Positions 12,484 through 45,489 of a stretch of DNA of 64,000 nt are shown piece by piece. The notes under the pieces were generated by a model, which saw only the letters and a list, made by a program, of their open reading frames with translations, did no database searches and was not told where the DNA came from. A program made the translations under genes and the position numbers. The stretch is from sequence record MW879340.1; one strand, written 5' to 3'. Each line of letters begins with the position of its first letter. The stretch's first letter is position 1.

Positions 12484-12493
12484 GCGACATAAA

Positions 12494-12525
12494 GCTAGGT
12501 AAGCCCCGCAAAGGGCTTACCTAGC
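12494..12525. terminator. bidirectional hairpin terminator
   Basis: GCTAGGTAAGCCC-CGCAAA-GGGCTTACCTAGC, 13-bp perfect stem between convergent genes. Confidence 0.85.
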
Positions 12526-12527
12526 AC

Positions 12528-12941: not shown

Positions 12942-12992
12942 TTACCACCCCTTATACAACATCGCTATCATACCATTTTCAGGAGACCTGCA

Positions 12993-18687: not shown

Positions 18688-18718
18688 GGGTCGGGCTTCG
18701 GTCCGGCCCTTATGCCGG
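18688..18718 (+). terminator. hairpin + TTATGCCG terminator-like element
   Basis: GGGTCGGGC-TTCG-GTCCGGCCC then TTATGCCGG. Confidence 0.75.
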
Positions 18719-18757
18719 CTGATGATATGTGTTGACTAATAAACACAAGGAGGAAAT

Positions 18758-19483
18758 ATGAACGGTGTAAAGGTGTCGGAGTTGGAGCCCGCTACCGCAC
18801 TCAGTGAAACGGATCTACTCTACATTATCCGTAAGAGTGTAGAAGGCGGAATGGAATCAAAGAGAGCGTCGCTTGGTGACTTGCTTAGCATGCTTGGGTC
18901 GGCTGGCTCAAAGGGTCTGGAACGAATTCAGCTTGGTAACAAAACCCAGCAAGAGTTCAATGATTTGTTCAATGCGCAGTTGATCGCTGAGAAGCCAGAA
19001 CACCCAACCTGTACAATGATGATGGTGCTTGAAAGTCTGGAGAACGGTGCCCAGGGGTCTATGGGGTCGATCACGGTTTTTCCAACATCAGAAGGCAAGT
19101 ACGTACTGGGATCGGGATTGAATGCGCTGGGTGACGGTAACTTAGGCATTGCCTTATTGTTTATCCCTAACGATCTGACCGACGGCGTATCCATGCTTTG
19201 TTGGTTCTCCCCCTTCTCAATGAACACTGGCGGCACGTCAGGTAAAGATGGTAATAGTGTTACGTTGAAAGGCAGCTTTGATAATTTCAACGATTTACCT
19301 TTACCGGGCGATAACCAGATAGGCGACTGCTGGTTCGTCAAAACAACGCTCTATTGTTGGGATGGCGGTAACTGGATTAACCTAGGCGATTTTGGTGGGC
19401 CTCAAGGTGAGAAAGGTGTTGATGCTGTCGGTATTGCCGATATCACTATCACCACCACACCGTACCTGATCCCTGATCCTTAA
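18758..19483 (+). CDS. putative tail-fibre-associated protein with collagen-like motif
   Basis: N-terminal VKVSELEPATALSETDLL as seen in fibre proteins; WDGGNWINLGDFGGPQGEKG module; AGGAGG RBS. Confidence 0.7.
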   Translation: MNGVKVSELEPATALSETDLLYIIRKSVEGGMESKRASLGDLLSMLGSAGSKGLERIQLGNKTQQEFNDLFNAQLIAEKPEHPTCTMMMVLESLENGAQGSMGSITVFPTSEGKYVLGSGLNALGDGNLGIALLFIPNDLTDGVSMLCWFSPFSMNTGGTSGKDGNSVTLKGSFDNFNDLPLPGDNQIGDCWFVKTTLYCWDGGNWINLGDFGGPQGEKGVDAVGIADITITTTPYLIPDP

Positions 19484-19495
19484 TCGAGGTTACCC

Positions 19496-20254
19496 ATGAC
19501 TGGCGGAACGATAGTAACGTTTAAATTCACGCTGTCCGACGGGACGGTTGTTGAAAAAGAACTTAAAGTAAAAGATGGCAACAACGCATACGAGATGTGG
19601 TTGATCGCCGGGCACTCTGGAACGTTGGACGACTATATTGCTTTTAATAAGGGCGAGAAGGGCGAACAAGGTGAACAGGGGTTGGAAGGGCCGATGGGTC
19701 CTATGTTGGAATTCGTCGGCGTATTCGACACCGTTGAAGAGTTACCTGTTGATGTCAATGTGAACAGCATCGCAACAGTAGGGACTTTCTTCTATTTCTT
19801 CAACGGTAGTGAATGGATTTCGTTGGGTAGCTTTGCGGGTCCACAGGGTGAGAAAGGTGATCCAGGTACGGCAAACTTTGCTATTAAGAGTGGTAACTTC
19901 TCCAGTAACTACTCGAATAACTTAGCGGCCGCTAACGCCCACGGCACTATCGGGGGTAAAGAGTACTGGAAATACACGATAAACTTGGACAAGGCGACGT
20001 ACAACAAGTATCCGGTTTGTAATGTGCTTTTGCAAGAATTGCCTTGTGATGCTAGCGGTGTTCCAGTGCCGTACACGTTGCATTATTTCTTCAACTCGTC
20101 CGGTGCCAATAAACCACCTAACATTGTGTTGATGCTGATTCTGCATGAGCCGGCAACTCAACTGCTGAGCAACACCACAGGACAGTATGGTCCTCTGGGG
20201 TTAGTCGACGACGTACAGTACGAACCGCATTATTCGGTGTCTTACTGGTATTGA
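19496..20254 (+). CDS. collagen-like (Gly-X-Y) fibre protein
   Basis: KGEKGEQGEQGLEGPMGP and FNGSEWISLGSFAGPQGEKGDPG. Confidence 0.75.
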   Translation: MTGGTIVTFKFTLSDGTVVEKELKVKDGNNAYEMWLIAGHSGTLDDYIAFNKGEKGEQGEQGLEGPMGPMLEFVGVFDTVEELPVDVNVNSIATVGTFFYFFNGSEWISLGSFAGPQGEKGDPGTANFAIKSGNFSSNYSNNLAAANAHGTIGGKEYWKYTINLDKATYNKYPVCNVLLQELPCDASGVPVPYTLHYFFNSSGANKPPNIVLMLILHEPATQLLSNTTGQYGPLGLVDDVQYEPHYSVSYWY

Positions 20255-20340: not shown

Positions 20341-21288
20341 ATGCTTGAGCTAATGTTAGCAGGAAATAATAAGCCAATTGTTCCTGAATCGGGACCTGGC
20401 AATAAACAGTTACTAGCGGGCAACCGAACCGATGGCTGGTTTGGTATTATACCTGCGGCCGAAATGCCGTCTCCATTTACTATTGCAACAACATCAGGAT
20501 TATCCGTAACGCTTCCACAAATCAACAACAATCCGCTGACATGGTTAAAAGCAGTACTGGACGGTAAGTACATCTTTTTCTCATCCACTCCGTTTAACAA
20601 CACGACCTTAACCGCGCTTTACAACGCTGGGGTCGTGTACGGCACAGATGACAATGGGTTACGAACCCCAACGGGTTCATCGCCGACCAATCAGCTTAAG
20701 TTGATTGTGTTTAAAGACTCGGCAAATAAAACGTGGTGTTTTAAAATCAGGCTGATCAACACCATCAACCCTAACACCATGACGTCAACGGACACCCCAG
20801 CGTCCACCAGTGTATATGCCGGGGAAATGTACAAGTTGTTCTCCCACATCATGGCTAGCGGTAACGTGCCGCAAGACGGGGTGAAGTGGGATAAGTTTGT
20901 AGCAGGTCGTGAATTCTACAATGACCGCTACCACAGTAATTCGGTGCAGGCGGGTAGTGTGTTCCAGGGCGCGCCAACGTACACCCTTGGTCAGTATGGC
21001 TGGTACGGTGTCGGTGTGTCGGTTAGTTGGATGCCGGTGCTGGAACTTATTAACCCAGACGTTGAGTTGGTTCCGCCAATTGAAGTCACTGGCGCCGCAC
21101 CGAAGATGATGCCGGCTAACGTAAACGCCACATCTAACATTGATGCACTCTCATCGTCGGAGCTGACAATGATATCGAGCACCTTAACACCACCGCTTGA
21201 ATCAGCCCCTGCCTCACCAGAGCCATTATCTGCTGGCGCTGTTAACACAGTCAATGCCCAGTGGCTCCCGCCGCACATGACCAATTAA
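20341..21288 (+). CDS. putative virion/tail protein, cassette 1 gene A
   Basis: MLELMLAG tag; SGPGNKQLLAG..GWFG and WMPVLEL motifs shared with 9 paralogs. Confidence 0.8.
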   Translation: MLELMLAGNNKPIVPESGPGNKQLLAGNRTDGWFGIIPAAEMPSPFTIATTSGLSVTLPQINNNPLTWLKAVLDGKYIFFSSTPFNNTTLTALYNAGVVYGTDDNGLRTPTGSSPTNQLKLIVFKDSANKTWCFKIRLINTINPNTMTSTDTPASTSVYAGEMYKLFSHIMASGNVPQDGVKWDKFVAGREFYNDRYHSNSVQAGSVFQGAPTYTLGQYGWYGVGVSVSWMPVLELINPDVELVPPIEVTGAAPKMMPANVNATSNIDALSSSELTMISSTLTPPLESAPASPEPLSAGAVNTVNAQWLPPHMTN

Positions 21289-21300: not shown

Positions 21301-22143
21301 ATGCACATTCATTTAAAATGGGTTAATGCCAACACCCAGCAAACTGTCACGAACATTTATCGTGGCACGACGACGCTTGATCGCAATAACCTAGGAACAC
21401 CGTTGGTGGTATTATCCGCAGGCGAGACCGAGTACTACGACCGCACCGTAGAAGCAGGTACGACCTATTACTACGTCATCGAATACGTTTCTGCCACCAC
21501 ACGAGTCAAATCACGTGTGTACAGCTTCCTGGCTGACTATGTCCGTGGCGCCGGTGGCAACGTAGTGTTGTTCGGTAATGATGATTTCGGTTTCATGGGG
21601 TACGGTACATTCCCATCATACACCGAGATTTTAACTAAGATTGGTGTGGGCCGTGAAACCGCCAGCCCGACAACAGACGCTGCGGTGAATGGTTGTAAAT
21701 TCAGTGTCGCCGGTAAAGTCTATTACTCTGTTTTCTTATCTGGCAGTGCCCTTGATTTTACAACGACACTGGCTTTCCTTAAGCGCACCGATAAACTCCC
21801 AATCACCATTGAGGGTATAAACTATCTGGCTTACCCGCTGGACATGCTGGGTGATGGTTTTGTATGGGACGGAACTTACTCAAGTACGGCACCGGTAGGT
21901 AAACGGGATATGTTCGAATACCTGGTGATTCCGCAATTACCGTCTGTCACGATAGATGGTTCGTGGAAAGGCGATGTGTTGGGTCGTGTCAGCACTCAAG
22001 GGACCAATAGCCCAATGTCAAAAGCGGTTGCGGGTATGGCACGCATTCCATATTGGAACATGACCAACAACACCATAGCCTACGCGGCATCAGCGGTGTC
22101 CTCCCAACTGTTGCACATCGTCTTAGAACTAGTAGAGGCTTAA
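21301..22143 (+). CDS. putative virion/tail protein, cassette 1 gene B (FN3-like N-terminus)
   Basis: IHLKWVN..NIYRG..YYD..GTTYYYVI pattern; ends IVLELVEA. Confidence 0.8.
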   Translation: MHIHLKWVNANTQQTVTNIYRGTTTLDRNNLGTPLVVLSAGETEYYDRTVEAGTTYYYVIEYVSATTRVKSRVYSFLADYVRGAGGNVVLFGNDDFGFMGYGTFPSYTEILTKIGVGRETASPTTDAAVNGCKFSVAGKVYYSVFLSGSALDFTTTLAFLKRTDKLPITIEGINYLAYPLDMLGDGFVWDGTYSSTAPVGKRDMFEYLVIPQLPSVTIDGSWKGDVLGRVSTQGTNSPMSKAVAGMARIPYWNMTNNTIAYAASAVSSQLLHIVLELVEA

Positions 22144-22144
22144 T

Positions 22145-23071
22145 ATGAGCATTACCCTAAATTGGAACAACCGGGGTCAGACCGTCACGGCGGTGAAGAT
22201 TTACCGCGGCACAAGCAGAATGGTGGCGTCAACGTTACTCACCACTATCAACAGTGCTGCGATAACGTATACCGACGACACCGCAGCGAATGACACGCTG
22301 TACTACTACAAAGTGGCGTTGGTAATCAATGGTGAAGAAGTCTCTGGTTCACTTCGCCCAATGGTTGCCTTCACAAACCTTGGTCCGGGCCCGACAACCT
22401 TAATTTCCGGCACCGCTGAATTCGGTTATTTCGGTAAGATGACGCCGCTTGAGTTTTTTACCGGTTCTGGATTACGGTCGGCAGTGGGTACTGCACCCCA
22501 GTACTGGACGAGTTACACCACCGAGATAACATGGTGGCGTAAATACGCGTACTTCGGTAAAATCCTTTACGTGCCGGATCTGCCTATTTACACAACTGCG
22601 TCCGCTAACAACTCTGCGATCAGTGCACTGTACACAGCTGGGATGTTGTATGGACATGGTAAGACAGATAAGAATTCGATCATTACCGTGGCAGCGACTG
22701 TTCAGAACAAAAAGGTCGTCAAGGACAGCTACGAGTTTTTGATTAAGGCCCCGTCTGCTAATATTTATACTGATCCGACGACATCGTTCATGAATCTTAC
22801 GCCTTCTTTGGATTATTACCAGAGTGAAGGGTTTCTTCTTTCGGCTCCGGCATCAACGTATTCGTATTCATCCATTGCATCCGGATTGGCGTTCCCGCGT
22901 GTAACACCGGCCGATACATACGGTGCTACCCTGGGTGGTATGGTTACGCAACACATGGTAACCGCTTCCACGTTTAACGTCCATTATAACTACACGGCCA
23001 GCCGTGCTAACTTGAACTGGACCGCCACCAACACGATTTACTACTTGCCAATTCTGCAATTGGTTCCATAA
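22145..23071 (+). CDS. putative virion/tail protein, cassette 1 gene C (FN3-like N-terminus)
   Basis: ITLNWNN..KIYRG..YTDDTAANDTLYYY; GPGPTTL..GYFG; ends LPILQLVP. Confidence 0.8.
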   Translation: MSITLNWNNRGQTVTAVKIYRGTSRMVASTLLTTINSAAITYTDDTAANDTLYYYKVALVINGEEVSGSLRPMVAFTNLGPGPTTLISGTAEFGYFGKMTPLEFFTGSGLRSAVGTAPQYWTSYTTEITWWRKYAYFGKILYVPDLPIYTTASANNSAISALYTAGMLYGHGKTDKNSIITVAATVQNKKVVKDSYEFLIKAPSANIYTDPTTSFMNLTPSLDYYQSEGFLLSAPASTYSYSSIASGLAFPRVTPADTYGATLGGMVTQHMVTASTFNVHYNYTASRANLNWTATNTIYYLPILQLVP

Positions 23072-23076
23072 CCACC

Positions 23077-23106
23077 AAGCGGGGCTTCGGTCCCGCTTTT
23101 ATGCCG
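23077..23106 (+). terminator. hairpin + TTATGCCG terminator-like element
   Basis: AAGCGGGGC-TTCG-GTCCCGCTT then TTATGCCG. Confidence 0.8.
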
Positions 23107-23148
23107 ATTGATGTTATGTATCCTGTATTTTAATAAGGTTAAGATACC

Positions 23149-24132
23149 ATGCTAGAGATCATCATATTTGGGGGTGCGGGTAACGGAAACTACCTCCCCA
23201 ACTCAGGACCTGGCAATAAGAAAGTACTAAAAGGAAGTAAGCAAAATGGATGGTTCGGGATGATTGATCCCTCGTATATGCCTACCATTCAAGAGGTCGG
23301 GAAGCAAGCCGGCATGATCACCCTGCCTGACTATACAGGGGCTAACCCAGCCAGACCTGCCTGGATGAAAGCCGTGATCGATGACAAGGTTATCTTCCTG
23401 CCTAACGGACCGTGGACTGGTGACATCAGTTATTGGGACTGCTACCGAGCGGGTGTAGTGTTTGGCGTTGACGGTATCAGTCCTGATAATACGAGTAGAC
23501 CTTCTGCGGCACTCAGCAGTTATAACCAGCTCAAGTACGTGGATTGGATTGACCCAACCGGTAAGGCCTGGTTGTTCAAGGTGCGGTTCATTAAGGGGAA
23601 CGCCCCCATCGTTGTAGCGAGTACTGGCGCAGTAAACTCAGACACGTCATCCAACAGTGAAGCGTATCAGCTGTTCTGGCGGACACGTGCGACATCGACC
23701 GCCAGTGAAGCAGAGCGTTGGGATTCGTTGGTATCGGGCGTGGATTATTACCAGTTCCGCTATTTCGACCAGACGTATATCCCTTCTGGTGATAACCGCA
23801 GCATTGGCGGTACGACAGCATTACCGGACGTTGGTCAGTGGTGGGGTGGTGGTTCGACGAACAAGTTCCCGTGGTGTCCGGTACTGGAAGTGGTGTCTCC
23901 GGACGATACTTTCATTTACCCTATCGGTGTCACTTTTGTCACACGGCAATCCACACCGTTAGCGCCAGTGATATCCAGTGATACTCGACTGATGGTTGCG
24001 GGTGATGTTGATCTGCAAAACCAGCGCACGATTCCACTGGCAGCGCTTGTCTCTTCTGATGCCTTTACGGTTGCCAATGCCGTGAGTTTCACTAACATGG
24101 CAGTCGCGCCGATTAACCCAATTATGAGTTGA
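23149..24132 (+). CDS. putative virion/tail protein, cassette 2 gene A
   Basis: MLEIIIFGG tag; NSGPGNKK..GWFG; WCPVLEV; paralog of 20341. Confidence 0.8.
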   Translation: MLEIIIFGGAGNGNYLPNSGPGNKKVLKGSKQNGWFGMIDPSYMPTIQEVGKQAGMITLPDYTGANPARPAWMKAVIDDKVIFLPNGPWTGDISYWDCYRAGVVFGVDGISPDNTSRPSAALSSYNQLKYVDWIDPTGKAWLFKVRFIKGNAPIVVASTGAVNSDTSSNSEAYQLFWRTRATSTASEAERWDSLVSGVDYYQFRYFDQTYIPSGDNRSIGGTTALPDVGQWWGGGSTNKFPWCPVLEVVSPDDTFIYPIGVTFVTRQSTPLAPVISSDTRLMVAGDVDLQNQRTIPLAALVSSDAFTVANAVSFTNMAVAPINPIMS

Positions 24133-24142: not shown

Positions 24143-24976
24143 GTGTATATCGACTTAAAGTGGACCAATGCTAACTCCGGTATGATGAAGACCAATATCT
24201 ACCGTAGCACCACGCCTTTAGACAAAGCCAACCTTGGTACACCGGTTGTCGTGTTAACGAACAACGAAACCACCTGGCGTGATCTGTCCGTGTCTCCTGC
24301 TGTGACGTATTATTACGTCATTGAGTTTGAAGCCAACGACGTTAAAGTTTCTACTCGTGTCTTCACAATGACTGCCAGTTACACACGTGGTCATGGTAAT
24401 GCGACGGTAGTCCTGGGTGATCAAGAATACGGGCTGATGGATCAGGTGGCTGTAGGTCGTATGGTCTCCGTACTGACCTCTGCCGGTTTCTCACAATCAG
24501 GCATGACCGACACCACGTTCGGACCAGGTACTAAGTTCAGTTACAAGAACAAAGTGTATTACGTGATCATGATGCAGGCTAACCTTGTTGGTTCCACCAT
24601 GGCGGCACTGACTCCGTTGTTTAATAACAATGACGGTGTTCCGGTAACGATCGAGGGATTCAACTACCTGTTGCGTCTGGCGAAGGTACTGGGACCAAGC
24701 TGGGATGGGTCTACGAAAGTAACTACCACCACGGACCTGGATGAATTCTACATCAAGTTCGTGCTCCCACAGTTCAGCTTCTTGGCTAACTGGCCGGGCG
24801 AGTCATTGGGTAAGCTTAACAACCTGGCGGCGACTAACATTATCGTTGGACGGGATGTTGTGGCGGGCACTGTTGCTACTCGAGTGGGTCGTAACGCCGC
24901 AGTTACCTGGTCAGCGACCACCACATCGTTAACATCGTCAACGTACGTTCCTTTCATCTTAGAACTGGTGGAGTAA
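24143..24976 (+). CDS. putative virion/tail protein, cassette 2 gene B
   Basis: IDLKWTN..NIYRS..NLGTPVVVL; ends FILELVE; paralog of 21301; GTG start. Confidence 0.8.
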   Translation: MYIDLKWTNANSGMMKTNIYRSTTPLDKANLGTPVVVLTNNETTWRDLSVSPAVTYYYVIEFEANDVKVSTRVFTMTASYTRGHGNATVVLGDQEYGLMDQVAVGRMVSVLTSAGFSQSGMTDTTFGPGTKFSYKNKVYYVIMMQANLVGSTMAALTPLFNNNDGVPVTIEGFNYLLRLAKVLGPSWDGSTKVTTTTDLDEFYIKFVLPQFSFLANWPGESLGKLNNLAATNIIVGRDVVAGTVATRVGRNAAVTWSATTTSLTSSTYVPFILELVE

Positions 24977-26030: not shown

Positions 26031-26537
26031 ATGTTTGAATCAATGATCTTAGGGAATACAAGACCAAAGGCTGTGTCTGGCCAGTCGGTTCGATTGTGTG
26101 GATTAAGCGCGCAAAATATAAACGTAATTGGGGTGTACGAACTTGAGCTTTACAACAAAGCGGGGGTTAACCTGTGTAGGGTCGCAGGCGCAACACCCGC
26201 AACATCGTACAGTCCGGCCACCACCAACTCGCCGTCGGTTAACTTGGTGAACTATCCACCATCTAACACCATTGATGGTAACACCACCGATTGGCACAGC
26301 ACGTGTTACATTGCCTGTGCTACCGATGGATCGGCTTGGTTACAGTACGACTTCCCAGTCCCGATCACGATTGACCACTGGTACTTCTTACCAGAAGGTC
26401 AATACATCCCGGCCGGTGCAGGTTTAAAGCTACAGATCTACATCGATGGTGTGTGGTGTGATATACGAGGTACCATGACCCCTACCCAGTGGTCATTTAG
26501 CAAATGGCACGTCTTTACGAACTTGTCCATCGTTTAA
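26031..26537 (+). CDS. discoidin/F5-8 type C-like carbohydrate-binding protein
   Basis: NTIDGNTTDWHS..AWLQYDFPVPITIDHW..LKLQIY..GVW pattern; MFESMILG tag. Confidence 0.65.
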   Translation: MFESMILGNTRPKAVSGQSVRLCGLSAQNINVIGVYELELYNKAGVNLCRVAGATPATSYSPATTNSPSVNLVNYPPSNTIDGNTTDWHSTCYIACATDGSAWLQYDFPVPITIDHWYFLPEGQYIPAGAGLKLQIYIDGVWCDIRGTMTPTQWSFSKWHVFTNLSIV

Positions 26538-26550
26538 TAAAAGGAAACCC

Positions 26551-26871
26551 ATGCTATCAGACATTACGGTCGGTCACATTTACAGCTCACAATCTGGTGT
26601 GCCGTTTATTGTGATCGCTAAAGCTGCTCACGGGCAAGACTGTTCATTGAGCATGATTGTCTATCAGAACCTCGAGCCGACGAAGGACTACCCGACCGGA
26701 AAGATCTGGGTGGAGCCTGAGTCGTTGTTCTTGACACAATTTAAAGAATTCGAATCAGGAGTTTATCATGACTACAACAATGCACGATCATCTACTGAAG
26801 CGGGGGTACGATCTGACCCGCTATCCTACTTCCTGGGTCACCGACACGACGCTGACTGTTCCACTGTTTGA
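26551..26871 (+). CDS. DUF1653-like protein
   Basis: Y...SG..F.VIA.A.H..D....IVYQNL...G.IWV.P...F pattern. Confidence 0.65.
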   Translation: MLSDITVGHIYSSQSGVPFIVIAKAAHGQDCSLSMIVYQNLEPTKDYPTGKIWVEPESLFLTQFKEFESGVYHDYNNARSSTEAGVRSDPLSYFLGHRHDADCSTV

Positions 26872-27296
26872 CTTTGCGGGTAAGCTGAAAGGGTATCAGA
26901 CGTATACCCCGAACGCACCGAAGAAAACGAAGAACCCGAAAGAAGCTAAATACTTCACCCGCATGATGGGTCACGGTCAGCTGGTCTGGGGTACAGAGCT
27001 GGAGTTGGAAATTAACAACCAACAGTCCGTGGGCAACCGTATTCTTAACTGAATCGGTCTTTAAAGCCTGTGCGTTACATCGGGCTGGTTTCAACGCGTG
27101 GTCTGTGTTAGGCAGTGACGTATCAACACAGCTCAAGCAGCAGTTACTTTTATTACCTCATCATTTTGTCTGTGCAGGGGACGATGATAAAGCAGGATTA
27201 AAGTTCTCACGCACGTTCCGTGATGGGTTTGTTTCCAGGGATCTAGATGAACTATCATCTGATGAAGTACGTGCACTAGCTGCACCATTCTTATAA
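26768..27296 (+). pseudogene. small Toprim primase-like gene split by a +1 frameshift
   Basis: Frame 1: HLLKRGY..PLFDFAGKLKGYQTY.P..K..NPKEAKYFT..LVWGTE; next frame, open from about 26967: TVFLTESVFKACALHRAGFNAWSVLG..CAGDDDKAG (Toprim E and DxD motifs). Confidence 0.8.
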
Positions 27297-27311
27297 TTAA
27301 AGGAACCTATC

Positions 27312-27911
27312 ATGATCGAGTCAATGTTGTTAGGCGGGAAGTCTAGCGTGCCCGCAGGCCAAGTGATGTATACGGCCGCTAACACATTCAGCTTCGTTGT
27401 GCCTGCTGGGGTTAACGAGATATCAGCATATGCACGAGGGTCTGGTGGCGGTGGCGGATACGGTAACACGTCGTACCGTGGTCTGGCCGGCGGGCCTGGC
27501 GGGATTGGTGGTAGCTCCTACGCAAACAAGATCCCGGTCACCCCAGGTGAAACGTTGACCGTGAGAATCGGCGCAGGTGGTGGAACACCAGGACCTGGTG
27601 CAGTGACACAGTTATTGCGTGACGATGTTGTTTTACTAACCGCGACAGCCGGTGCAGCAGGCTACAACTCCAGCGGAACGGGTAGCAGTGAGAACAACCC
27701 GGGCTCGCCTGGACCGGCAGCAGGGGCTATTCCTGGTGCCACTGGATTGGGTACGGGAAATGCCTTACCGGGCAGTGGTGGTAACGGTGGTAAAGGTTAC
27801 GGGTTCAGTGGTGGTTACACCGCATCAAAAGGTATCAACGGTTGCATGCGTATTATCTGGGGTAGCAATCGTGCTTTCCCTAGCACAAACGTGGCTGACG
27901 TCGTAGCGTAA
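27312..27911 (+). CDS. glycine-rich tail adhesin-like protein
   Basis: FSFVVPAGVNEISAYARGSGGGGG..IPVTPGETLTVRIGAGG..GINGCMRIIWG; MIESMLLGG tag. Confidence 0.75.
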   Translation: MIESMLLGGKSSVPAGQVMYTAANTFSFVVPAGVNEISAYARGSGGGGGYGNTSYRGLAGGPGGIGGSSYANKIPVTPGETLTVRIGAGGGTPGPGAVTQLLRDDVVLLTATAGAAGYNSSGTGSSENNPGSPGPAAGAIPGATGLGTGNALPGSGGNGGKGYGFSGGYTASKGINGCMRIIWGSNRAFPSTNVADVVA

Positions 27912-28004: not shown

Positions 28005-29330
28005 ATGAGCTCAGGAAAAGCGGTAGTAGAAGACTTCCGTCAGTTAGCACGGGTGGTACGTATCGATGACGTCATTCAGCACCCAAATGCTGACCGTATG
28101 TCTTTAGCCATCATTGGTGGCTGGCAGGTATGCATCAAGTTAGAAGAATTCAAGAAAGGTGATCTGGCGTTGTACTGCGAGATTGACTCTCTGGTGCCAA
28201 CCAGTGTACCAGAGTTTGCCTTCCTGGAAGAACGCAAAGACGGTTTGAAGTCATTCGGCGAACAGACGTACTCGCGCATCAAAACCATCAAGTTGCGTAA
28301 AGAGCTGTCGCAGGGCCTACTGGTCCCAATCCCTCGTCAGCTTGAAACGCCGGTTGAAGAAGGTGATGACCTGACTCAGGCACTGGGTGTGTTGAAGTAT
28401 GAGAAGTCTGCTTCAAAAAACCTGACTTCGGTCGAACCAACTTACAGCCTGTATCATCGTCTGGCGTTGCGTATTCGTGGGCCAGAGGTTGAGCCGCTGC
28501 CGTTCCCAGCATTCTTGCGCAAGTCCGAAGAGAACCGCGTACAGAACTCCTCATCGCAATACCGTCGTGCGGTAGAAGAAGGTGAAGAATTCGAAGTCAC
28601 CGTGAAACTCGATGGTGAATCAATGACCTTGTATTCCGTCATTGATGGCACTGCGGTCCGCACAGGGGTATGTTCACGTAACTGTGAAATCCGTCAGGAC
28701 GATGTGGTATTCACGCCGGTTCAGATGCTGCGTCGCTGGATTGGTGGTCTGATGCTGCGTAACCGGCGTGCATTCAGCTGGCGTCGTATCACATGGCCTA
28801 AAGAAGCAACAACCCCACTGGCCTGGTTACGTGAGTTCCGTGAAAACAATACGCGCTATGACATCCTCAATGTGGGGTTGCCTAGCGTTGAACGTGTTAT
28901 TTCTGCGCTGGATGATCCTTTCTTCAACTACGCTTGCAAGAGCAACGCATTGATGCAACTCGCGTCGGTATCACTGGAAGACCGTTGTGCGTACACCGTG
29001 CAGGGTGAACTGTTCGGTCCTGGTATCCAGGGTAACTATGAAGGCGTGCAAGAAACTTCCTTCAACGTCTACCGTGTCTACGTTGATGGCCGTGATGCGT
29101 TACTGCCTGATGAAGCGCGAGCATTGTGTAAACGCATGGGCCTGAAGTACGTACCGGTTCTTGAAGAACGTACCAAACTGCCAGCTGATATCAAAGAAGC
29201 GCTGGCGAAAGCAGACGGTAAGCGTTACTACTCCGGCAAGCCAAACCGTGAAGGCGTGGTCTACAAATCGTTAGCACGTGACTTCTCGTTTAAAGTTATC
29301 AGCAACAAGTATTTGCTCAGCGAAGACTAA
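28005..29330 (+). CDS. ATP-dependent RNA ligase, DRB0094/Rnl5 family
   Basis: N-terminal HPNADR..GGWQV..Y.EIDS..IKTIKLRKELSQGL; motif I KLDGES; SRN; QGEL.GPGIQGN; REGVV; FKVIS. Confidence 0.9.
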   Translation: MSSGKAVVEDFRQLARVVRIDDVIQHPNADRMSLAIIGGWQVCIKLEEFKKGDLALYCEIDSLVPTSVPEFAFLEERKDGLKSFGEQTYSRIKTIKLRKELSQGLLVPIPRQLETPVEEGDDLTQALGVLKYEKSASKNLTSVEPTYSLYHRLALRIRGPEVEPLPFPAFLRKSEENRVQNSSSQYRRAVEEGEEFEVTVKLDGESMTLYSVIDGTAVRTGVCSRNCEIRQDDVVFTPVQMLRRWIGGLMLRNRRAFSWRRITWPKEATTPLAWLREFRENNTRYDILNVGLPSVERVISALDDPFFNYACKSNALMQLASVSLEDRCAYTVQGELFGPGIQGNYEGVQETSFNVYRVYVDGRDALLPDEARALCKRMGLKYVPVLEERTKLPADIKEALAKADGKRYYSGKPNREGVVYKSLARDFSFKVISNKYLLSED

Positions 29331-29339
29331 GGTTAAATC

Positions 29340-30578: not shown

Positions 30579-30581
30579 TCC

Positions 30582-31214: not shown

Positions 31215-31853
31215 TTAAGTCTTTGGTACGAAGAAACGTATCTTACCTATCTTGCCATTGAAGGCGCGGGAGCTGAATGTGTCGGTAAACGAACCAATCG
31301 CCAACACAACGTTTGAGTTGTTAAATGTTACGTTCGTTGCGTTTGATTGTAGCTGGTCGTTGAAATACAGCTCAAGCGTTGTTCCGGTACGTTTTAATCG
31401 TAACGTGGTCAATTGGTCAACGGTTAATGCGTTAGCCGTTTTAAGCGCATTCCAGACTCCATTTGAACCAACCCAATAGAATTCAATTTTACCTTGGGTG
31501 CTGGGCTGAAACCCGAAATACCACCCGCCTGTACCGCTACCGTTGAATGCCCGTGACATAACAATCCCGCCGTTATTCACAGCAGCCGGTATAACGTCGA
31601 TGGACAGTTCCCAGTTGGTCAGGCTAAAGTTTATCAGGTTATAGATAGTGCCGGATTGATACATGCCGCCGCCGGCATTACCTCTGAAGCAATTACCCAA
31701 TGTAGCATCGTTGGTAATAACACCAGTACCTCCGACATTAAAAACGGTTTTCGATACGACTTCCGTTGTTTTAGTACCAGGACCTTCACGCCAATCGATG
31801 AGAAACAAATCATCTGTTTTTGCGACGGCATCTCTCATCAGCATTTCCAACAT
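31215..31853 (-). CDS. LamG/concanavalin-A-like lectin domain protein
   Basis: GGWYFG..IEF..TLRLKR.GTTLELYFNDQL..LAIG..FNGKIGKIRF; MLEMLMR tag. Confidence 0.75.
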   Translation of the reverse strand: MLEMLMRDAVAKTDDLFLIDWREGPGTKTTEVVSKTVFNVGGTGVITNDATLGNCFRGNAGGGMYQSGTIYNLINFSLTNWELSIDVIPAAVNNGGIVMSRAFNGSGTGGWYFGFQPSTQGKIEFYWVGSNGVWNALKTANALTVDQLTTLRLKRTGTTLELYFNDQLQSNATNVTFNNSNVVLAIGSFTDTFSSRAFNGKIGKIRFFVPKT

Positions 31854-38609: not shown

Positions 38610-39488
38610 TTAACTGAAATCTAACTCATAGATAATGTTACCAGCGATTGTACCGCTGGTTGCCATCGCAGCTGCTGTGGTGTATACAGACCACTGCAAG
38701 CCAATGACGTTAGATGCATCCTGCCACCCTGTGAAGATACGGCCCGACCCGGAGTAGATGTTGTTCTCATCCCCCAGGCGATACCCATCTTTAAACCAAC
38801 GGTTAGCATTGGTGGTGTTATCCCAGTTAAGTGCCGTTGAGAACTGAGCGCACAGTTCACTCTTCAGCTTATCGGCCATACCGGTAATCGTCTGAACACC
38901 GCTCAGGTCGGTCGATGGGGATGACGTAGGTAAACGCACCTTAAACCCATAATCCCCTTTATCAATTGACATGATCGGTGACGCAGTATTACCAAACGCC
39001 TTGACCAGTTTATAGTTGATCATGTTCACTACAGAATACGTGCCGATGACCGCATTCGGAATGAAAATGATCTTACCATTAACCACCCACTTACGGTACT
39101 TGGTTGGCGTGTCCGCAGCGACACGTGTAAACCCACCGGTCGAAGCCACCTCATCAAATGTTGGCAGTAACGCCATATCGGTAGTGACTTCACCAAAGTA
39201 ACCGTATTCCCAGTCCCCAATGATGATGTTCTTAGGGCCCGGCCCCGTATCAGGGAAGTAGCCAATGGGCGTGCGCTTACTCAACGTCTCAGCACCGTCC
39301 TTCACCGACGCAATGGAATACCAATAGACCACGTTGGTGACGGTCGGTGTATTGTCTTCATACGTCAGTGCATTACCGGCTGTAGTACCAACCAATTCAA
39401 GTGTACCGGTCTTTGTTGCTGATCGGTAGATCTTGATTGAGTCAAGCGGTACTGTACCCCTGTTCGTCCAGGAAAGTTTAACACCCAT
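38610..39488 (-). CDS. putative virion/tail protein, cassette 3 gene C
   Basis: VKLSWTN..KIYRS..TYEDNT; DTGPGPKN..WEYGYFG. Confidence 0.8.
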   Translation of the reverse strand: MGVKLSWTNRGTVPLDSIKIYRSATKTGTLELVGTTAGNALTYEDNTPTVTNVVYWYSIASVKDGAETLSKRTPIGYFPDTGPGPKNIIIGDWEYGYFGEVTTDMALLPTFDEVASTGGFTRVAADTPTKYRKWVVNGKIIFIPNAVIGTYSVVNMINYKLVKAFGNTASPIMSIDKGDYGFKVRLPTSSPSTDLSGVQTITGMADKLKSELCAQFSTALNWDNTTNANRWFKDGYRLGDENNIYSGSGRIFTGWQDASNVIGLQWSVYTTAAAMATSGTIAGNIIYELDFS

Positions 39489-39500
39489 ACAAACCTCCCA

Positions 39501-40406
39501 TTAGAATAACAGTTCCAGCACCAGAACCGGACGCGCTGACGCACCCACGGTGTAGTTCAGGGTGTTAGTTGACAATGACGCGTACACATACTGCGCGCCA
39601 GAAGCACCTAACGTTGTCGACCAATGCACGTTAACGTTTGTGCCCGGTGCAAGGTCGCCTAAACGATACTTAGCATATGACGTCACACCCGCAACCGGCA
39701 CGGGTAATTGCCCCGCCGTGTTACCGAACAATGAAAACATCATTCCAAGTTCTGTGGTATAGATACCGTCGTAGTTGGCGAGAGCCGGGGTTGACACTCC
39801 TGTTAGGTTAGCATGCGGGCATCGAATAACATACTCGTACCCGTTCTTAAACCCGGTGATGCCTTTGTTGGGGTAGTCGCCATCGACAACAATGAGCTTA
39901 TTGGTGACCAGCGATGCAGGTGTTATAGTCGAAGCCGAGTAAGTGTTATCCGGAATGAACACAATACGTCCTGCAATGACGCATTTGTGATAGGTCGCAA
40001 TAGTAGGCGCGTTGGTAGGCGGCAACACGTTGGCCGCGCCAACCGCGGTAAGCAGTAGCTGGAAAATCTCATTACCTACAAGTAACTCACTGGACGAGAC
40101 TTCACCAAAGTAGCCAAACGCCCAGTCGCCGCGTAGCAATACACTTGGACCTGGCCCTGTGTCGGGATAGTACCCGATCGGAATCTGATCCCCGTACGTC
40201 ACACTGCCATCCGCTTTCTTCGACCCTACCACGATGTAATACAACGTGTTGTTGACGCCGGTCGGGTACGTGTAAGACGTCACATCAGACGCTACTTCAA
40301 CTTTATCAGTTGGTAACGCCGACAGATTCACCGGGGAACCTACGTTACGGTACAGCACGTACCCGGTGGAGTTAGGGACTGCCGCCCAATTTACAGCGAT
40401 GCCCAT
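39501..40406 (-). CDS. putative virion/tail protein, cassette 3 gene C'
   Basis: IAVNWA..LYRN..NNTLYY; DTGPGPSVL..WAFGYFG; RPVLVLELL. Confidence 0.8.
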   Translation of the reverse strand: MGIAVNWAAVPNSTGYVLYRNVGSPVNLSALPTDKVEVASDVTSYTYPTGVNNTLYYIVVGSKKADGSVTYGDQIPIGYYPDTGPGPSVLLRGDWAFGYFGEVSSSELLVGNEIFQLLLTAVGAANVLPPTNAPTIATYHKCVIAGRIVFIPDNTYSASTITPASLVTNKLIVVDGDYPNKGITGFKNGYEYVIRCPHANLTGVSTPALANYDGIYTTELGMMFSLFGNTAGQLPVPVAGVTSYAKYRLGDLAPGTNVNVHWSTTLGASGAQYVYASLSTNTLNYTVGASARPVLVLELLF

Positions 40407-40407
40407 A

Positions 40408-41307
40408 TTACGCCTCCACTAATTCTAACACCGGCCACCAACTGAAGGTGGTGGTTGTCGATGCCAATCCTTGGAACCCAGCCGAGGAAAGCTTGGTGCG
40501 TTCATTCGTAGTGATGCCGGCAAAATAACGGACAAATGCCATATCACCCTCAAGCCCTTTTTCCTGACACAGAATGTAATAACCTGTGGAGTACAAGTTT
40601 GTCACGGCAACTTGCAACCAGTTAGGCATGCGCTGCGTTAACGGCGTTGGTGCGCACATTGGATACACGAAGTCGTTGAATTCGCAGGTTTGTGTGTACG
40701 CAGTTGTGTCAAACGTTCCGAGTGCTTTGGCCGGCAGCGGCACGGCGCTGTCTGATTCGTTCCAGCCGCGCATTAAACGCACTTTCCAGTTATAGCCGGC
40801 AATCTGTACAACGGTCCCGTCAATCAACCCCTTCAGCTGTAAGGCGTTGTAGCCGGTGCTGTTACCCAACGCATGTTCAGGCACCATATACACTTTGCCG
40901 CGACGCGCGTACTTGTACCAGCTGGTATTGGCATAAACGTTAGCAACCGCTGACCCGACCAGGGTGTTCAGGTTAGCCGCAGTAATAAAGGAGTCAACGG
41001 ACAGGATGTCGTACAACCCTAATTCACGGTCACCGTAAATGAAGACGTTGGAACCTGGACCACGGGTTTCGGCTGCCTGAATAGGTTGGTCGCGAGAGAT
41101 AATGGTTTCGGAACCGTTGGTTGTTTTAAAGACGTAATGGTAAGTATTACCCTGGACAGCTGTCAAATCGACGTAGCTGGTTTCTTGTGCGGTAAGGACC
41201 ACCAGAGGGGCTGGTAAGTTTGCACGGTCTATCTTCGTATCGCTACGGTAGATCGTGGTGGTGACAGGTTGAGTGTTTTTATTCACCCAACTAAGTTTAA
41301 TCGACAT
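40408..41307 (-). CDS. putative virion/tail protein, cassette 3 gene B
   Basis: IKLSWVNKN..TIYRS..NLPAPLVVL..ETSYVD; WWPVLELVEA. Confidence 0.8.
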   Translation of the reverse strand: MSIKLSWVNKNTQPVTTTIYRSDTKIDRANLPAPLVVLTAQETSYVDLTAVQGNTYHYVFKTTNGSETIISRDQPIQAAETRGPGSNVFIYGDRELGLYDILSVDSFITAANLNTLVGSAVANVYANTSWYKYARRGKVYMVPEHALGNSTGYNALQLKGLIDGTVVQIAGYNWKVRLMRGWNESDSAVPLPAKALGTFDTTAYTQTCEFNDFVYPMCAPTPLTQRMPNWLQVAVTNLYSTGYYILCQEKGLEGDMAFVRYFAGITTNERTKLSSAGFQGLASTTTTFSWWPVLELVEA

Positions 41308-41316: not shown

Positions 41317-42447
41317 CTATTGGTCAACGAGTTTAATTCCTGTTAATGGTGCTGGCGTGTAGGTCGCTGTTACGCCGAACGCGCCGATCAACGGAACAGT
41401 GCGTGCGGTGGCGACTGGAGGTTTACCCAGCAAACTTACTTTTAGTGCATTCGGTACGGTTGGGGAACCGGCCGTTGACACTGTAATGGCGCGCGGCACC
41501 GCAGACAACAGACCCACCTTAATATCAGCCGGTCTACTCAACAGCACAGCGTAACCTTTGGACAATAACGACCCGTCTGTCATGGACCCACGAACAGAAC
41601 GCACGGTAATCAAACCACCTGCGGTTTCACCTTTCTCAACGTAGAGGTCGAGTACCTTAGGAGGAGGGTTATCCGCAGTAAACCCGGTGAGATCCAACAG
41701 ATGGTCAGCAGGGTTGAGGTACCTCAGCACCGGCCACCAACGGAAACCAGACGACCGTACTGTCTTGCCGGTTGTGCCGAACGACATCAAACCTTTACTG
41801 GTACCCGGTACCCCATTCACCATCCCCGTACCAGCTGCACCGGATGATGTTTTCATAATGGCATTAGAGCCGGTCTCAAGACTGGTGGTCGGGAGCTCAT
41901 CCCATTTCCCGGTACCAAAGCGGAAACCTACCTGATACACATTGGAAAGCAACTCGGCGAATTCACCCTTACCTGACGCCCCTGCAACGGTCCCGTCGGA
42001 AACAGGATCACTGTCATAGGCAGCGGACAGTCTTGGCCAGAAACCAGCCGTCTTACCTTCCAGTGTTTTGGAGATGGTAAACCGTTGGTTGATTGGTGTA
42101 GCCGGGGGTGCTGGGAACGTGCCGTCGTCATCTGTCCCGTAGACAATCCCCAGCTGATACAGATCCTGCCAGGAATATTGTTGGTTTGGACCGGTGATAG
42201 GACGAGTCGGAATGTAGACGATCTCACCCTTGTAGTAGAATTTACACCACAACATCGAAACGTCATTGTTCGGGTCAAGCGCGGGCATGCCTAACAAGTT
42301 GAAGAGTTCAGTTGATGTAAACAGTTGCGATTGCGTTAACGTACCAAAATAGCCGGCTTGTTCATTCCCACCGGCTAACGACTTAGGGCCAGGTCCAGAG
42401 TTAGGGTAAAATGGTTTACCCCCTCCAGCGACAAGCATTTCTAACAT
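41317..42447 (-). CDS. putative virion/tail protein, cassette 3 gene A
   Basis: MLEMLVAGG tag; NSGPGPKSLAGG..AGYFG; WWPVLRY. Confidence 0.8.
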   Translation of the reverse strand: MLEMLVAGGGKPFYPNSGPGPKSLAGGNEQAGYFGTLTQSQLFTSTELFNLLGMPALDPNNDVSMLWCKFYYKGEIVYIPTRPITGPNQQYSWQDLYQLGIVYGTDDDGTFPAPPATPINQRFTISKTLEGKTAGFWPRLSAAYDSDPVSDGTVAGASGKGEFAELLSNVYQVGFRFGTGKWDELPTTSLETGSNAIMKTSSGAAGTGMVNGVPGTSKGLMSFGTTGKTVRSSGFRWWPVLRYLNPADHLLDLTGFTADNPPPKVLDLYVEKGETAGGLITVRSVRGSMTDGSLLSKGYAVLLSRPADIKVGLLSAVPRAITVSTAGSPTVPNALKVSLLGKPPVATARTVPLIGAFGVTATYTPAPLTGIKLVDQ

Positions 42448-44931: not shown

Positions 44932-45489
44932 ATGATTGAATCGATTATTCGCACAGCTGTACAACGTGCTTCACAGGAATCCAATGCTGAAGCCTATCTC
45001 GTTCGTTTGCGTCAATACATCGAATCTGATATCCGCCATCAGATCAAACTACACGGCGGCCGTCAAAGCTTTGACGTTAATACTCGTTTCCATTTAGGTT
45101 ACAGTGACGCGGATGGTTTCTATCAAGAGATCACCACGAATGTAGTCTGCGCCGGGAACGGAAAAGAAATGGTCGAACACGTCCGTTTCCCAGTTTCACC
45201 AAACTCGTTGCTTGGCTCCTTGCGCGGTGTCTTCCACCATGCAGCGATAAAAGCCAAACAAGCCAGCGACACCTATTTCACTGGCGGTCAAGTCCTGACT
45301 ACCCAGACTGCACTCCAGAACGAACTTCAACCATTCTTTGCCAACCACAAAGCTATCGTCGTGCTGAACCATGCGCGCACAGGTAACTATGCGGTTGACG
45401 TCGAACTGATTCAGAGTTCAATGAAAAACCTGGGTGCTATGATGCAGGCCCTGGAGCACAACTTACCGGATGATCTGGTAACCGCATAA
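44932..45489 (+). CDS. hypothetical protein
   Basis: 185-aa ORF, AAGGG RBS, terminator follows. Confidence 0.8.
   Translation: MIESIIRTAVQRASQESNAEAYLVRLRQYIESDIRHQIKLHGGRQSFDVNTRFHLGYSDADGFYQEITTNVVCAGNGKEMVEHVRFPVSPNSLLGSLRGVFHHAAIKAKQASDTYFTGGQVLTTQTALQNELQPFFANHKAIVVLNHARTGNYAVDVELIQSSMKNLGAMMQALEHNLPDDLVTA

What the first reader, a model, noticed from the sequence alone, without database searches (positions are those of the whole stretch)
26031..27911. Shared N-terminal tag on six putative virion proteins with unrelated passenger domains: a plug-in adhesin system?
Seen: MLELMLAGN (20341), MLEIIIFGG (23149), MFESMILGN (26031, discoidin-like), MIESMLLGG (27312, Gly-rich), MLEMLMRDA (31853 minus, LamG-like) and MLEMLVAGG (42447 minus). 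The consensus M-(L/I/F)-E-four mostly hydrophobic residues-small/G-G is followed by a short linker and then cassette core domains or three unrelated adhesin-type folds. B and C cassette proteins lack it. Inference: an ~8-residue docking or export peptide lets the phage attach interchangeable sugar- or protein-binding heads to one virion socket. I do not know this as a described system.
Basis: partly seen in the sequence, partly recalled or inferred. Interest (0 to 1): 0.75.

Follow-up and report, generated by a model that had tools for sequence, protein, structure and literature searches.

The report
Shared N-terminal tag on phage adhesins
A giant Erwinia phage puts the same 8-residue peptide at the very start of at least 14 small sugar-binding-type proteins with unrelated folds, most likely as a docking label that fastens interchangeable adhesin heads onto its tail-fibre apparatus; the principle is known from small phages but has not been described for this phage family.

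Summary
The window is Erwinia phage pEa_SNUABM_48, a 294-kb phiKZ-related jumbo phage.

- **Statistics.** The motif occurs 7 times in six frames of the window against 0.45 expected, always at the first Met of a long ORF.
- **Census.** The whole genome holds 14 confident carriers: 4 fibre-core paralogues, 4 Gly-rich adhesin folds, 4 ConA/LamG-like, 1 discoidin and 1 Kelch.
- **Selection.** Codons differ between carriers, so selection acts on the peptide. In orthologues the first 10 residues are 95% identical against 55% overall.
- **Structure.** AlphaFold2 leaves the tag as a free coil.
- **Position.** The tag sits at the junction where paralogues carry an FN3-like N-domain and SPN3US orthologues carry a DUF7941 N-domain.
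- **Other lineages.** They use different shared tags. Seven clustered Kelch/LamG proteins of phage CBB begin MLPF…, and two of them are virion components by mass spectrometry.

The best reading is an N-terminal docking peptide for virion attachment. Virion attachment is inferred and the acceptor is unidentified. The principle is already known from K1-5/SP6 and KP32-type conserved peptides, so this is a new variant of a known kind.

The parts
20341..21288 (+). A1: tag (MLELMLAGN) + 'P..SGPG..G.FG' linker + fibre-core domain, 315 aa
   Evidence: (phrog_3589/1062/16120 'virion structural protein')
21301..23071 (+). B1 (21301-22143) and C1 (22145-23071): tag-less paralogues with an FN3-like N-domain (~65 aa) followed by the same linker and core
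23149..24132 (+). A2: tag (MLEIIIFGG) + linker + fibre-core domain, 327 aa
24143..25940 (+). B2 (24143-24976) and C2 (24978-25940): tag-less paralogues with an FN3-like N-domain
26031..26537 (+). D: tag (MFESMILGN) + discoidin-like (F5/8 type C) domain, 168 aa
   Evidence: E 7.6e-6, just below the gathering score. In the metagenomic orthologue P0061 the reading frame opens with MLEMFMSGNK four codons upstream of the called start, so that is its likely true start.
27312..27911 (+). E: tag (MIESMLLGG) + TNF-like/polyglycine adhesin domain (Gly_rich_2), 199 aa
   Evidence: AF2: residues 1-10 are coil with pLDDT 55 and the domain starts at residue 16. Foldseek: Pam3 fibre 7yfw (E 4.6e-4), Bxb1 tail tip.
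31215..31853 (-). F: tag (MLEMLMRDA, no GG) + Laminin_G_3/ConA-like domain, 212 aa
   Evidence: Orthologues P0083-P0085 and P0089 (35-48% identity) all start MLE + hydrophobic residues.
38610..41307 (-). C3 (38610-39488), B3' (39501-40406), B3 (40408-41307): tag-less paralogues with an FN3-like N-domain
41317..42447 (-). A3: tag (MLEMLVAGG) + linker + fibre-core domain + disordered C-terminal third, 376 aa
   Evidence: In 14 orthologues the first 10 residues are 95% identical against 55% overall. AF2: residues 1-8 pLDDT below 50, core 11-252 confident. The core fold is shared with 'virion structural proteins' of many chimalliviruses.
44932..45489 (+). Doubtful seventh match (MIESIIRTAV), 185 aa, phrog_11162. 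Probably not a member.
   Evidence: It does have the GATCATATG promoter-like motif 88 nt upstream.
18758..20254 (+). Two fibre-like genes just upstream of cassette 1: 18758-19483 (PHROG tail-fibre hits) and 19496-20254 (collagen-like Gly-X-Y, tail-fibre PHROGs). Candidate scaffold, untested.

Best explanation
The peptide M-[L/I/F]-E-x-hydrophobic-hydrophobic-x-G(-G) is an N-terminal attachment label.

pEa_SNUABM_48 places it in front of at least 14 small, beta-rich, lectin- or adhesin-type proteins. These are fibre-core paralogues, gp38/Pam3-gp24-like polyglycine adhesins, ConA/LamG domains, a discoidin domain and a Kelch propeller. The label is a free, unstructured extension ahead of a short linker.

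It most likely inserts into a pocket or strand-pairs with an acceptor in the peripheral baseplate/fibre network. That would load a repertoire of binding heads onto the virion.

It is a minimal alternative to two globular N-terminal attachment domains used at the same junction by relatives: the FN3-like domain of the B/C paralogues and the DUF7941 N-domain of the SPN3US-type orthologues.

Shown here:
- the tag exists and is enriched at N-termini;
- it is selected at the peptide level;
- it is the best-conserved block of its proteins;
- it is predicted not to pack on its own domain;
- it substitutes positionally for globular N-domains;
- other phage lineages use other shared tags on homologous passengers.

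Inferred:
- virion incorporation in this phage;
- docking as the mechanism;
- the identity and number of acceptors.
For: - **Enrichment.** 7 observed against 0.45 expected, all at ORF starts. 13/398 N-termini against 4/2668 internal Met.
- **Peptide-level selection.** Codons are varied and ribosome-binding sites are normal.
- **Fourteen carriers with five passenger types**.
- **Conservation.** A3 orthologues keep the first 10 residues at 95% identity against 55% overall. F orthologues keep it. So does the D orthologue P0061, read from the ATG four codons upstream of its called start.
- **Distant phages carry the tag.** PhiEaH1; RSL2, in an in-frame ATG just upstream of the annotated start; PCH45 and CR3; EspYZU08; Deimos-Minion; metagenomic contigs.
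- **Structure.** AF2 gives coil and low pLDDT for the tag next to confident domains.
- **Alternative N-modules.** The tag, the FN3-like domain and the DUF7941 domain sit at one junction ahead of the same linker and core.
- **Passenger E** has the fold of fibre proteins solved in situ. Pam3 gp24 attaches by its N-terminal part (PMC9942802).
- **Homologue P0031** lies between a 565-aa protein and a DUF4376 gene, downstream of the tape-measure gene (PF06791) of a phage contig.
- **Other lineages have their own shared tags.** CBB has seven clustered Kelch/LamG proteins starting MLPF…. The CBB paper names CBB_551 and CBB_552 as MS-verified virion proteins (PMC5259590). By gene order I equate these with two of the seven, which is my inference. 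Locus L069 has M(S)LILVPPY on two neighbouring genes.
- **Precedent.** Conserved docking peptides of 7-29 aa are described (PMC6872550).
- **Shared upstream motif.** A TATGT-type promoter-like motif lies upstream of tag genes, of the fibre-like gene at record 80758 and of a DUF7941 gene.
Against: - There is no direct evidence that any tagged protein of this phage is in the virion. All CDS are annotated 'hypothetical'.
- The homologue of the tagged Gly-rich protein in Ea35-70/RAY/Deimos-Minion is annotated only 'hypothetical', and gp134-gp136 do not occur in the text of the RAY/Deimos-Minion lysate MS paper.
- Tagged genes are scattered among metabolic genes such as ligases, thymidine kinase, DHFR and a helicase, not in one structural module.
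- No acceptor was identified.
- DUF7941, the most attractive acceptor, is reported as chimallivirus-specific. Tagged homologues nevertheless exist in Vequintavirinae.
- The DUF7941 linkers of this phage contain no tag-like motif.
- phiKZ, the only relative with a full structural atlas, shows no MLE tags in the 95 kb I read, and its gp131-135 are not detectably related to A/B/C.
Confidence: 0.55

Rival explanations
1. Assembly or sorting label. The tag is recognised transiently by a phage chaperone or an assembly-site factor that folds or delivers beta-rich fibre parts. It is not the final junction, and it may be trimmed.
For: - The tag is unstructured in both models.
- Homologue P0031 is followed by a DUF4376 gene in a phage tail-gene neighbourhood. 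That this family acts as a tail-fibre assembly factor is my own recollection, not tested here.
- PHROG 'tail fiber assembly' families match the Gly-rich domain.
Against: - No chaperone gene consistently neighbours the tagged genes.
- The tag replaces globular domains that are structural parts in relatives.
- The Goslar preprint predicts that DUF7941 modules join head to tail (AlphaFold), and purified gp22 forms filaments in negative stain.
Confidence: 0.15
2. Oligomerisation motif. Tags of several chains pair with each other into a small N-terminal bundle or sheet, for example among A, B and C in a cassette or among three identical heads. There would be no separate socket.
For: - Many fibre heads are trimers.
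- Each A gene is followed by two or three B/C-type genes in this phage, and by a B and a C gene in PhiEaH1 and RSL2.
- phiKZ fibres are hetero-hexamers held by N-terminal parts (PMC13250141).
Against: - B and C lack the tag, so it cannot pair with them symmetrically.
- Solitary tagged genes of five different folds share the same tag, which fits a common partner better than self-association.
Confidence: 0.1
3. Non-virion role. The tag targets these lectin-like proteins to the envelope or outside the infected cell, for example for surface masking or superinfection exclusion.
For: - The genes sit among early/metabolic-type genes.
- In Vequintavirinae the homologues also lie outside the structural module.
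Against: - By inspection the tag has an acidic residue at position 3, no basic n-region, and only 3-5 hydrophobic residues before Gly-Gly. It does not look like a Sec, Tat or lipoprotein signal. No predictor was run.
- The analogous CBB proteins are virion components by MS.
- A TATGT motif upstream resembles what I recall as the phiKZ late-promoter type (from memory, unverified).
Confidence: 0.06
4. Expression element. The first codons are kept because they tune translation initiation or N-terminal stability. They would not serve binding.
For: The position is fixed at the initiator Met. Several carriers share a promoter-like motif.
Against: - Synonymous codons vary freely.
- Conservation runs to residues 8-10, including Gly-Gly.
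- A GTG start is used in one relative.
- The carriers are restricted to adhesin-type folds.
Confidence: 0.04

Closest known systems
K1-5 / K1E / SP6 adapter system (hepta- and undecapeptide on the two tailspikes)
   Same: A very short N-terminal peptide, shared within a phage group, fastens receptor-binding proteins with unrelated heads to a common acceptor (PMC6872550).
   Different: It involves two large trimeric tailspikes on a podovirus, and the acceptor is a known adapter with a T4gp10-like domain. Here there are at least 14 small lectin-type proteins on a jumbo myovirus, and the acceptor is unknown. The peptides are described as different for each phage group; I did not compare their sequences with this tag.
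'Conserved peptide' + T4gp10-like branching domain of KP32, KP34, Menlow and PhiK64-1/RaK2 Klebsiella phages
   Same: The N-terminal peptides are lineage-specific, 7-29 aa long and different in each phage group. They sit on secondary RBPs. The interaction has been validated experimentally for KP32/K11/KP34 (PMC13352976 abstract; PMC6872550).
   Different: The passengers are depolymerases. The branching domain was not sought or found here. The number of tagged proteins per genome is much smaller.
DUF7941 (PF25613) filament module of Chimalliviridae (Goslar preprint 10.64898/2026.04.21.720040)
   Same: Same phage family. An N-terminal module carries carbohydrate-binding passengers into a baseplate-anchored filament cloud. 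SPN3US orthologues of the A proteins carry the DUF7941 N-domain exactly where pEa48 has the tag.
   Different: DUF7941 is a ~150-aa globular domain plus a linker and C-domain. The tagged proteins give no PF25613 hit. Whether the tag docks onto DUF7941 proteins is untested.
T-even gp38 / Pam3 gp24 polyglycine adhesins
   Same: Passenger E and its three Gly_rich_2 paralogues have this fold, and attachment is through the N-terminal part.
   Different: Those proteins use a helical N-terminal attachment domain. Here only about 15 unstructured residues precede the fold.
Phage CBB cluster of Kelch/LamG proteins (RefSeq FDG95_gp425-431; CBB_548-554 by my gene-order count)
   Same: Seven small Kelch/LamG/unknown proteins share their own 12-residue N-terminal tag (MLPF…YGN). 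The paper names CBB_551 and CBB_552 as virion proteins by MS.
   Different: The tag sequence is different, the phage is Rak2-like, and the genes are clustered rather than scattered. The shared tag is not mentioned in the passages of the CBB paper I read. The match between RefSeq tags and CBB numbers is my inference.

Membership tests
Short conserved N-terminal docking peptides of phage receptor-binding proteins (K1-5/SP6, KP32-type) | A short N-terminal peptide is shared by RBPs of one phage or lineage whose remaining sequence is unrelated. | tested here: met
   14 carriers with five passenger types. M1 and E3 are invariant in the 18-sequence N-terminal alignment.
Short conserved N-terminal docking peptides of phage receptor-binding proteins (K1-5/SP6, KP32-type) | The peptide differs between phage lineages while the passengers are exchanged. 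| tested here: met
   Homologous passengers carry MLPF… in CBB, M(S)LILVPPY in L069, and other peptides in Gly_rich_2 homologues.
Short conserved N-terminal docking peptides of phage receptor-binding proteins (K1-5/SP6, KP32-type) | An acceptor protein (an adapter, or an RBP with a T4gp10-like branching domain) is encoded by the same phage. | not tested
   I made no proteome-wide search for T4gp10-like domains. Candidate acceptors (DUF7941 paralogues, the gp139-like protein, B/C N-domains, the fibre-like gene at 18758) were identified only by context.
Short conserved N-terminal docking peptides of phage receptor-binding proteins (K1-5/SP6, KP32-type) | Physical binding of the peptide to the acceptor, and presence of the carrier in the virion. 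| not testable with these tools
   Support is indirect only: MS-verified CBB analogues and fold matches to fibres solved in situ.
DUF7941 (PF25613) module proteins | A significant PF25613 match. | tested here: not met
   A1, A2, A3 and the other carriers give no PF25613 hit. pEa48 genes 9, 10 and 12, and the SPN3US A-type protein, do.
gp38 / Pam3 gp24-type polyglycine adhesins | A TNF-like/beta domain plus a polyglycine-rich lattice domain. | tested here: met
   Gly_rich_2 scores above the gathering score for E and two paralogues. Foldseek to 7yfw gives E 4.6e-4 and probability 1.0, though with a modest TM-score of 0.42.
gp38 / Pam3 gp24-type polyglycine adhesins | A helical N-terminal attachment domain. 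| tested here: not met
   Only 15 residues of coil precede the first strand.
phiKZ gp131 paralogue family | Sequence similarity to phiKZ gp131/133/134/135. | tested here: not met
   phmmer of A1, B1, C1, A3, B3 and C3 against phiKZ gp126-143 gives no hit at E <= 0.01. The A core is nevertheless a chimallivirus-wide 'virion structural protein' fold.
Sec/Tat/lipoprotein signal peptides | A basic n-region, a hydrophobic core of 7-15 residues, and a cleavage site or lipobox. | tested here: inconclusive
   By inspection these features are absent (Glu at position 3; 3-5 hydrophobic residues, then Gly-Gly). No signal-peptide predictor was available.

The most novel reading that the evidence does not exclude
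Jumbo phages of several lineages may use a general address-label system that has gone unrecognised. Each lineage would own a private 8-12-residue N-terminal tag: MLE…GG in many chimalliviruses and some Vequintavirinae, MLPF…YGN in CBB, M(S)LILVPPY in another lineage. The tag would load a large, freely exchangeable repertoire of small lectin heads onto a filament or whisker scaffold, such as the DUF7941 cloud or the CBB tail hairs. The MLE tag itself would be a stripped-down substitute for the DUF7941 N-domain.
Probability: 0.35. Interest if true: 0.75.

Novelty: new variant of a known kind. Interest (0 to 1): 0.6.

Why it matters
If the tag is a docking label, it identifies the host-recognition repertoire of a poorly annotated jumbo phage from sequence alone. 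That is 14 candidate adhesins in a record where every gene is 'hypothetical'.

It would also explain why small Kelch, LamG, discoidin and polyglycine genes are scattered through chimallivirus genomes. It links them to the recently proposed fibre cloud of this family, and it gives structural biologists a defined 8-residue ligand with which to look for the acceptor in baseplate maps.

There is a practical annotation point as well. In several records the called start skips or overruns the tag: PhiEaH1 gp085, RSL2 ORF185, pEa48 genes 166 and 177, and metagenomic P0061. Tag-aware start calling would correct these.

Tried and rejected
- **IMG/VR pattern scan.** A degenerate DNA pattern for M-L/F-E-x-M-L/F-x-G-G gave 54 hits. 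Nearly all were chance, being internal or out of frame. Only L019 and L022 looked real. The tag is too short for collection-wide pattern mining.
- **Alternative start codons.** A GTG/TTG scan of the phage found no further convincing carriers.
- **PDB sequence searches.** A3 and E gave nothing useful. Foldseek of the A3 core against the PDB gave no significant match.
- **Tag-like motif in DUF7941 linkers.** A regex search in this phage and in Goslar gp22/23 found none, apart from one chance match in the gp139-like protein.
- **phiKZ.** No MLE tags in record positions 105-200 kb, and no similarity between gp131-135 and A/B/C. I dropped the label 'gp131 family'.
- **tblastn with the Gly-rich protein.** The low-complexity filter blunted it.
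- **First structure job.** I removed those rows and did not send them anywhere else.
- **Rejected on inspection.**
  - Prohead-protease propeptide: as I recall the chimallivirus cleavage motif, it needs a small residue two positions before the Glu, whereas here that position is the initiator Met.
  - Type IV prepilin-like leader: the hydrophobic stretch is far too short.
  - A DNA-level repeat: the codons differ.
Full report
**Identity of the window.** The window is record positions 62001-126000 of Erwinia phage pEa_SNUABM_48 (MW879340.1; 294,405 bp; host Erwinia amylovora). It is 100% identical over the 12 kb tested. Every CDS in the record is annotated 'hypothetical protein'. I read the rest of the record as separate loci and never joined them.

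The phage is phiKZ-related. It encodes homologues of the phiKZ major capsid protein, portal, prohead protease and gp139. It also encodes three full-length DUF7941 (PF25613) proteins.

**The observation.**
- A regex for the tag matches seven times in all six frames of the 64-kb window. Each match is the first Met of an ORF of at least 168 aa. Shuffled sequence gives a mean of 0.45 and a maximum of 3.
- In the whole record, 13 of 398 long-ORF N-termini match against 4 of 2668 internal Met positions (p = 3.6e-9).
- The codons for Leu2, Glu3 and the hydrophobic residues differ from gene to gene, and each gene has an ordinary ribosome-binding site. The conservation therefore lies in the peptide and not in the DNA.
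- The seventh window match (44932) is probably not a member. It matches only phrog_11162, and by eye its sequence looks unlike the lectin-type passengers.

Eight more carriers lie outside the window or the finding. The 14 confident carriers are:
- four fibre-core paralogues (A1, A2, A3 and record 289413);
- four Gly_rich_2 proteins (window 27312; record 126723, 128713, 253118);
- four ConA/LamG-like proteins (window 31853; record 175985, both Laminin_G_3; record 236131, phrog_6011 'virion structural protein'; record 244981). The last two have no Pfam hit, and I class them as ConA-like from their sequence alone;
- one discoidin-like protein (window 26031);
- one Kelch propeller (record 148585).

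None has an enzymatic or DNA-metabolism domain. For two of them, the record's annotated start lies a few codons inside the tag.

**Conservation elsewhere.**
- Fourteen metagenomic orthologues of A3 (43-68% identical) keep the first ten residues at 95% identity against 55% for the whole protein. This is the best-conserved block in the protein.
- Orthologues of F at 35-48% identity all begin MLE plus hydrophobic residues.
- The closest orthologue of D has MLEMFMSGNK in frame four codons upstream of the called start, which I take as its true start.
- The tag heads A-type proteins in PhiEaH1, and in RSL2 when read from an ATG upstream of the annotated start. It does so in a 227-kb IMG/VR contig as well, once with a GTG start.
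- It also heads Gly-rich proteins in Deimos-Minion, in a metagenomic relative and in the Vequintavirinae phage EspYZU08. It heads phrog_6011 homologues in PCH45 and, as MNEMLMLG, in CR3.

**Where the tag sits.**
- The B and C proteins of each cassette consist of a ~65-residue FN3-like N-domain, then a 'P..GPGP…G.FG' linker and the core. The A proteins have the same linker and core, with the tag in place of the N-domain.
- In SPN3US the corresponding cassette is A-B-C too. There the A-type proteins (470 and 498 aa) carry the N-terminal globular half of DUF7941 (profile positions 1-153), directly followed by the same linker and core. Two metagenomic proteins are built the same way.
- The tag, the FN3-like domain and the DUF7941 N-domain are therefore alternative N-terminal modules at one junction.
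- The Goslar preprint predicts (AlphaFold) that DUF7941 proteins join head to tail. It shows that purified gp22 forms filaments, and it proposes baseplate-anchored filaments. Some members carry predicted carbohydrate-binding passengers.
- The phiKZ atlas shows fibres anchored by N-terminal domains.

**Structure.**
- AlphaFold2 of E, with 36 sequences, gives a confident beta domain from residue 16. Residues 1-10 are coil with mean pLDDT 55.
- AlphaFold2 of A3, whose alignment contains 15 sequences with a nearly invariant tag, still leaves residues 1-8 below pLDDT 50. They sit next to a confident core spanning residues 11-252.
- The tag is thus not predicted to be part of either fold.
- The E model matches the Pam3 fibre gp24 (E 4.6e-4), Bxb1 tail-tip chains and the ALK/LTK TNF-like/glycine-rich domain. 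Pam3 gp24 is described as resembling the S16 gp38 adhesin, and it attaches to the baseplate wedge by its N-terminal part.
- The A3 core has no PDB match. It is shared with 'virion structural proteins' across chimalliviruses.

**Other lineages, other tags.**
- Homologues of the Gly-rich passenger carry various other short hydrophobic N-termini. One of them lies between a 565-aa protein and a DUF4376 gene, downstream of the tape-measure gene of a phage contig.
- A homologue of D starts MSLILVPPY and its neighbour starts MLILVPPY.
- In the 'hairy' Rak2-like jumbo phage CBB, seven adjacent small Kelch, LamG and unassigned proteins all begin MLPF, followed by a Y-G/A-N motif at positions 10-12.
- The CBB paper reports CBB_551 and CBB_552 in the mature virion by mass spectrometry. 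It suspects that genes absent from the hairless relative GAP32 encode the tail whiskers, but could not pinpoint them. Equating these numbers with RefSeq gp428 and gp427 is my inference from gene order. The passages I read do not mention the shared N-terminus.

**Interpretation.** The most economical reading is an N-terminal docking peptide that fastens exchangeable adhesin heads to the fibre/baseplate periphery. The principle is established for K1-5/SP6 (7- and 11-residue peptides) and for KP32, KP34, Menlow and PhiK64-1 phages. There the peptide is lineage-specific and can be as short as seven residues. For KP32/K11/KP34 it has been validated experimentally (abstract).

What is new here is the phage family, the tag itself, the number and fold diversity of carriers, and the positional equivalence to DUF7941 and FN3-like N-domains.

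**What remains inferred or open.**
- Virion incorporation in this phage is inferred, and so are the binding mechanism and the acceptor.
- DUF7941 proteins are an attractive acceptor. Their reported restriction to chimalliviruses does not fit the tagged homologues in Vequintavirinae, and their linkers hold no tag-like motif.
- The tagged genes are scattered among ligase, RtcB, DHFR and helicase genes.
- Several carriers are preceded by a rare promoter-like motif. GATC[TA]TAT[GA] occurs only seven times in 294 kb, and four of those lie 31-38 nt upstream of tag genes. A related TATGT motif stands upstream of the fibre-like gene at record 80758 and of a DUF7941 gene. It resembles what I recall as the phiKZ late-promoter type, which I did not verify.

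**Rivals.** In falling order of weight:
- a transient chaperone or sorting label;
- an oligomerisation motif;
- a non-virion targeting signal;
- an expression element.

Noticed in passing
window 26551-27296 (between the two tagged genes of the finding): This looks like a split DNA-primase-like gene. Two short ORFs match different stretches of one 435-position primase PHROG (phrog_849), and each also matches a whole small PHROG of its own (phrog_14043, phrog_17952). At least one interruption separates the two pieces, and the N- and C-terminal thirds of the long profile are not seen. A third ORF (phrog_9138, unknown function) overlaps the first piece. Because each piece has its own family in other phages, this may be a recurrent split arrangement rather than fresh decay.
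   Followed up: partly
record MW879340.1 positions 106844, 148547, 176021, 236100, 248628, 289446 (the first equals window 44844): GATC[TA]TAT[GA] occurs only 7 times on both strands of the 294-kb genome. Four copies lie 31-38 nt upstream of solitary tag genes. One lies 88 nt upstream of the doubtful 44932 gene. One lies 32 nt upstream of a 108-aa ORF starting MKETLMV. This looks like a dedicated promoter class.
   Followed up: partly
window 18700-18757, 23090-23148; record ~253120-253210: A G+C-rich hairpin is followed by 'TTATGCCG…GATG.TATGT' upstream of the fibre-like gene 18758, of A2 and of a Gly-rich tag gene. This looks like a terminator-promoter unit reused between late-type genes.
   Followed up: no
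window 42487-44640 (-): An SNF2/DEAD-type helicase (phrog_62, E 5e-108) lies next to cassette 3. It is the same class of protein (SWI/SNF-family SF2 helicase) as RAY gp131, which was reported to be virion-associated. Homology to RAY gp131 was not tested.
   Followed up: no
window 2631-4586, 28005-31172, 35339-37075: A nucleic-acid repair and nucleotide-metabolism set is interleaved with the fibre cassettes: an NAD-dependent DNA ligase, an RNA ligase with a PHA02142 OB domain, RtcB, a thymidine-kinase-like gene, and a 578-aa protein with a C-terminal DHFR domain. A metagenomic relative keeps the order Gly-rich adhesins, TK, AAA, DHFR, helicase.
   Followed up: partly
L008 (PhiEaH1 gp085), L009 (RSL2 ORF185), record 128698/148597 (pEa48 genes 166 and 177), L068 (P0061): Annotated or called start codons skip or overrun the tag. 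Reading from the tag's ATG gives a normal Shine-Dalgarno spacing in pEa48, RSL2 and L019.
   Followed up: yes
L009 (RSL2) 11887-13062: Two adjacent small RSL2 proteins (ORF181, ORF180) share another N-terminal motif (…LLLKKK…) followed by similar beta-rich sequence. This may be a second tag class in the same phage.
   Followed up: no
L011 (Cronobacter phage EspYZU08) 6001-6738: An unannotated 245-aa ORF encodes a tagged (MLEILTIGA) Gly-rich adhesin-like protein in a Vequintavirinae genome, beside features annotated as ligase. The record is sparsely annotated here.
   Followed up: partly
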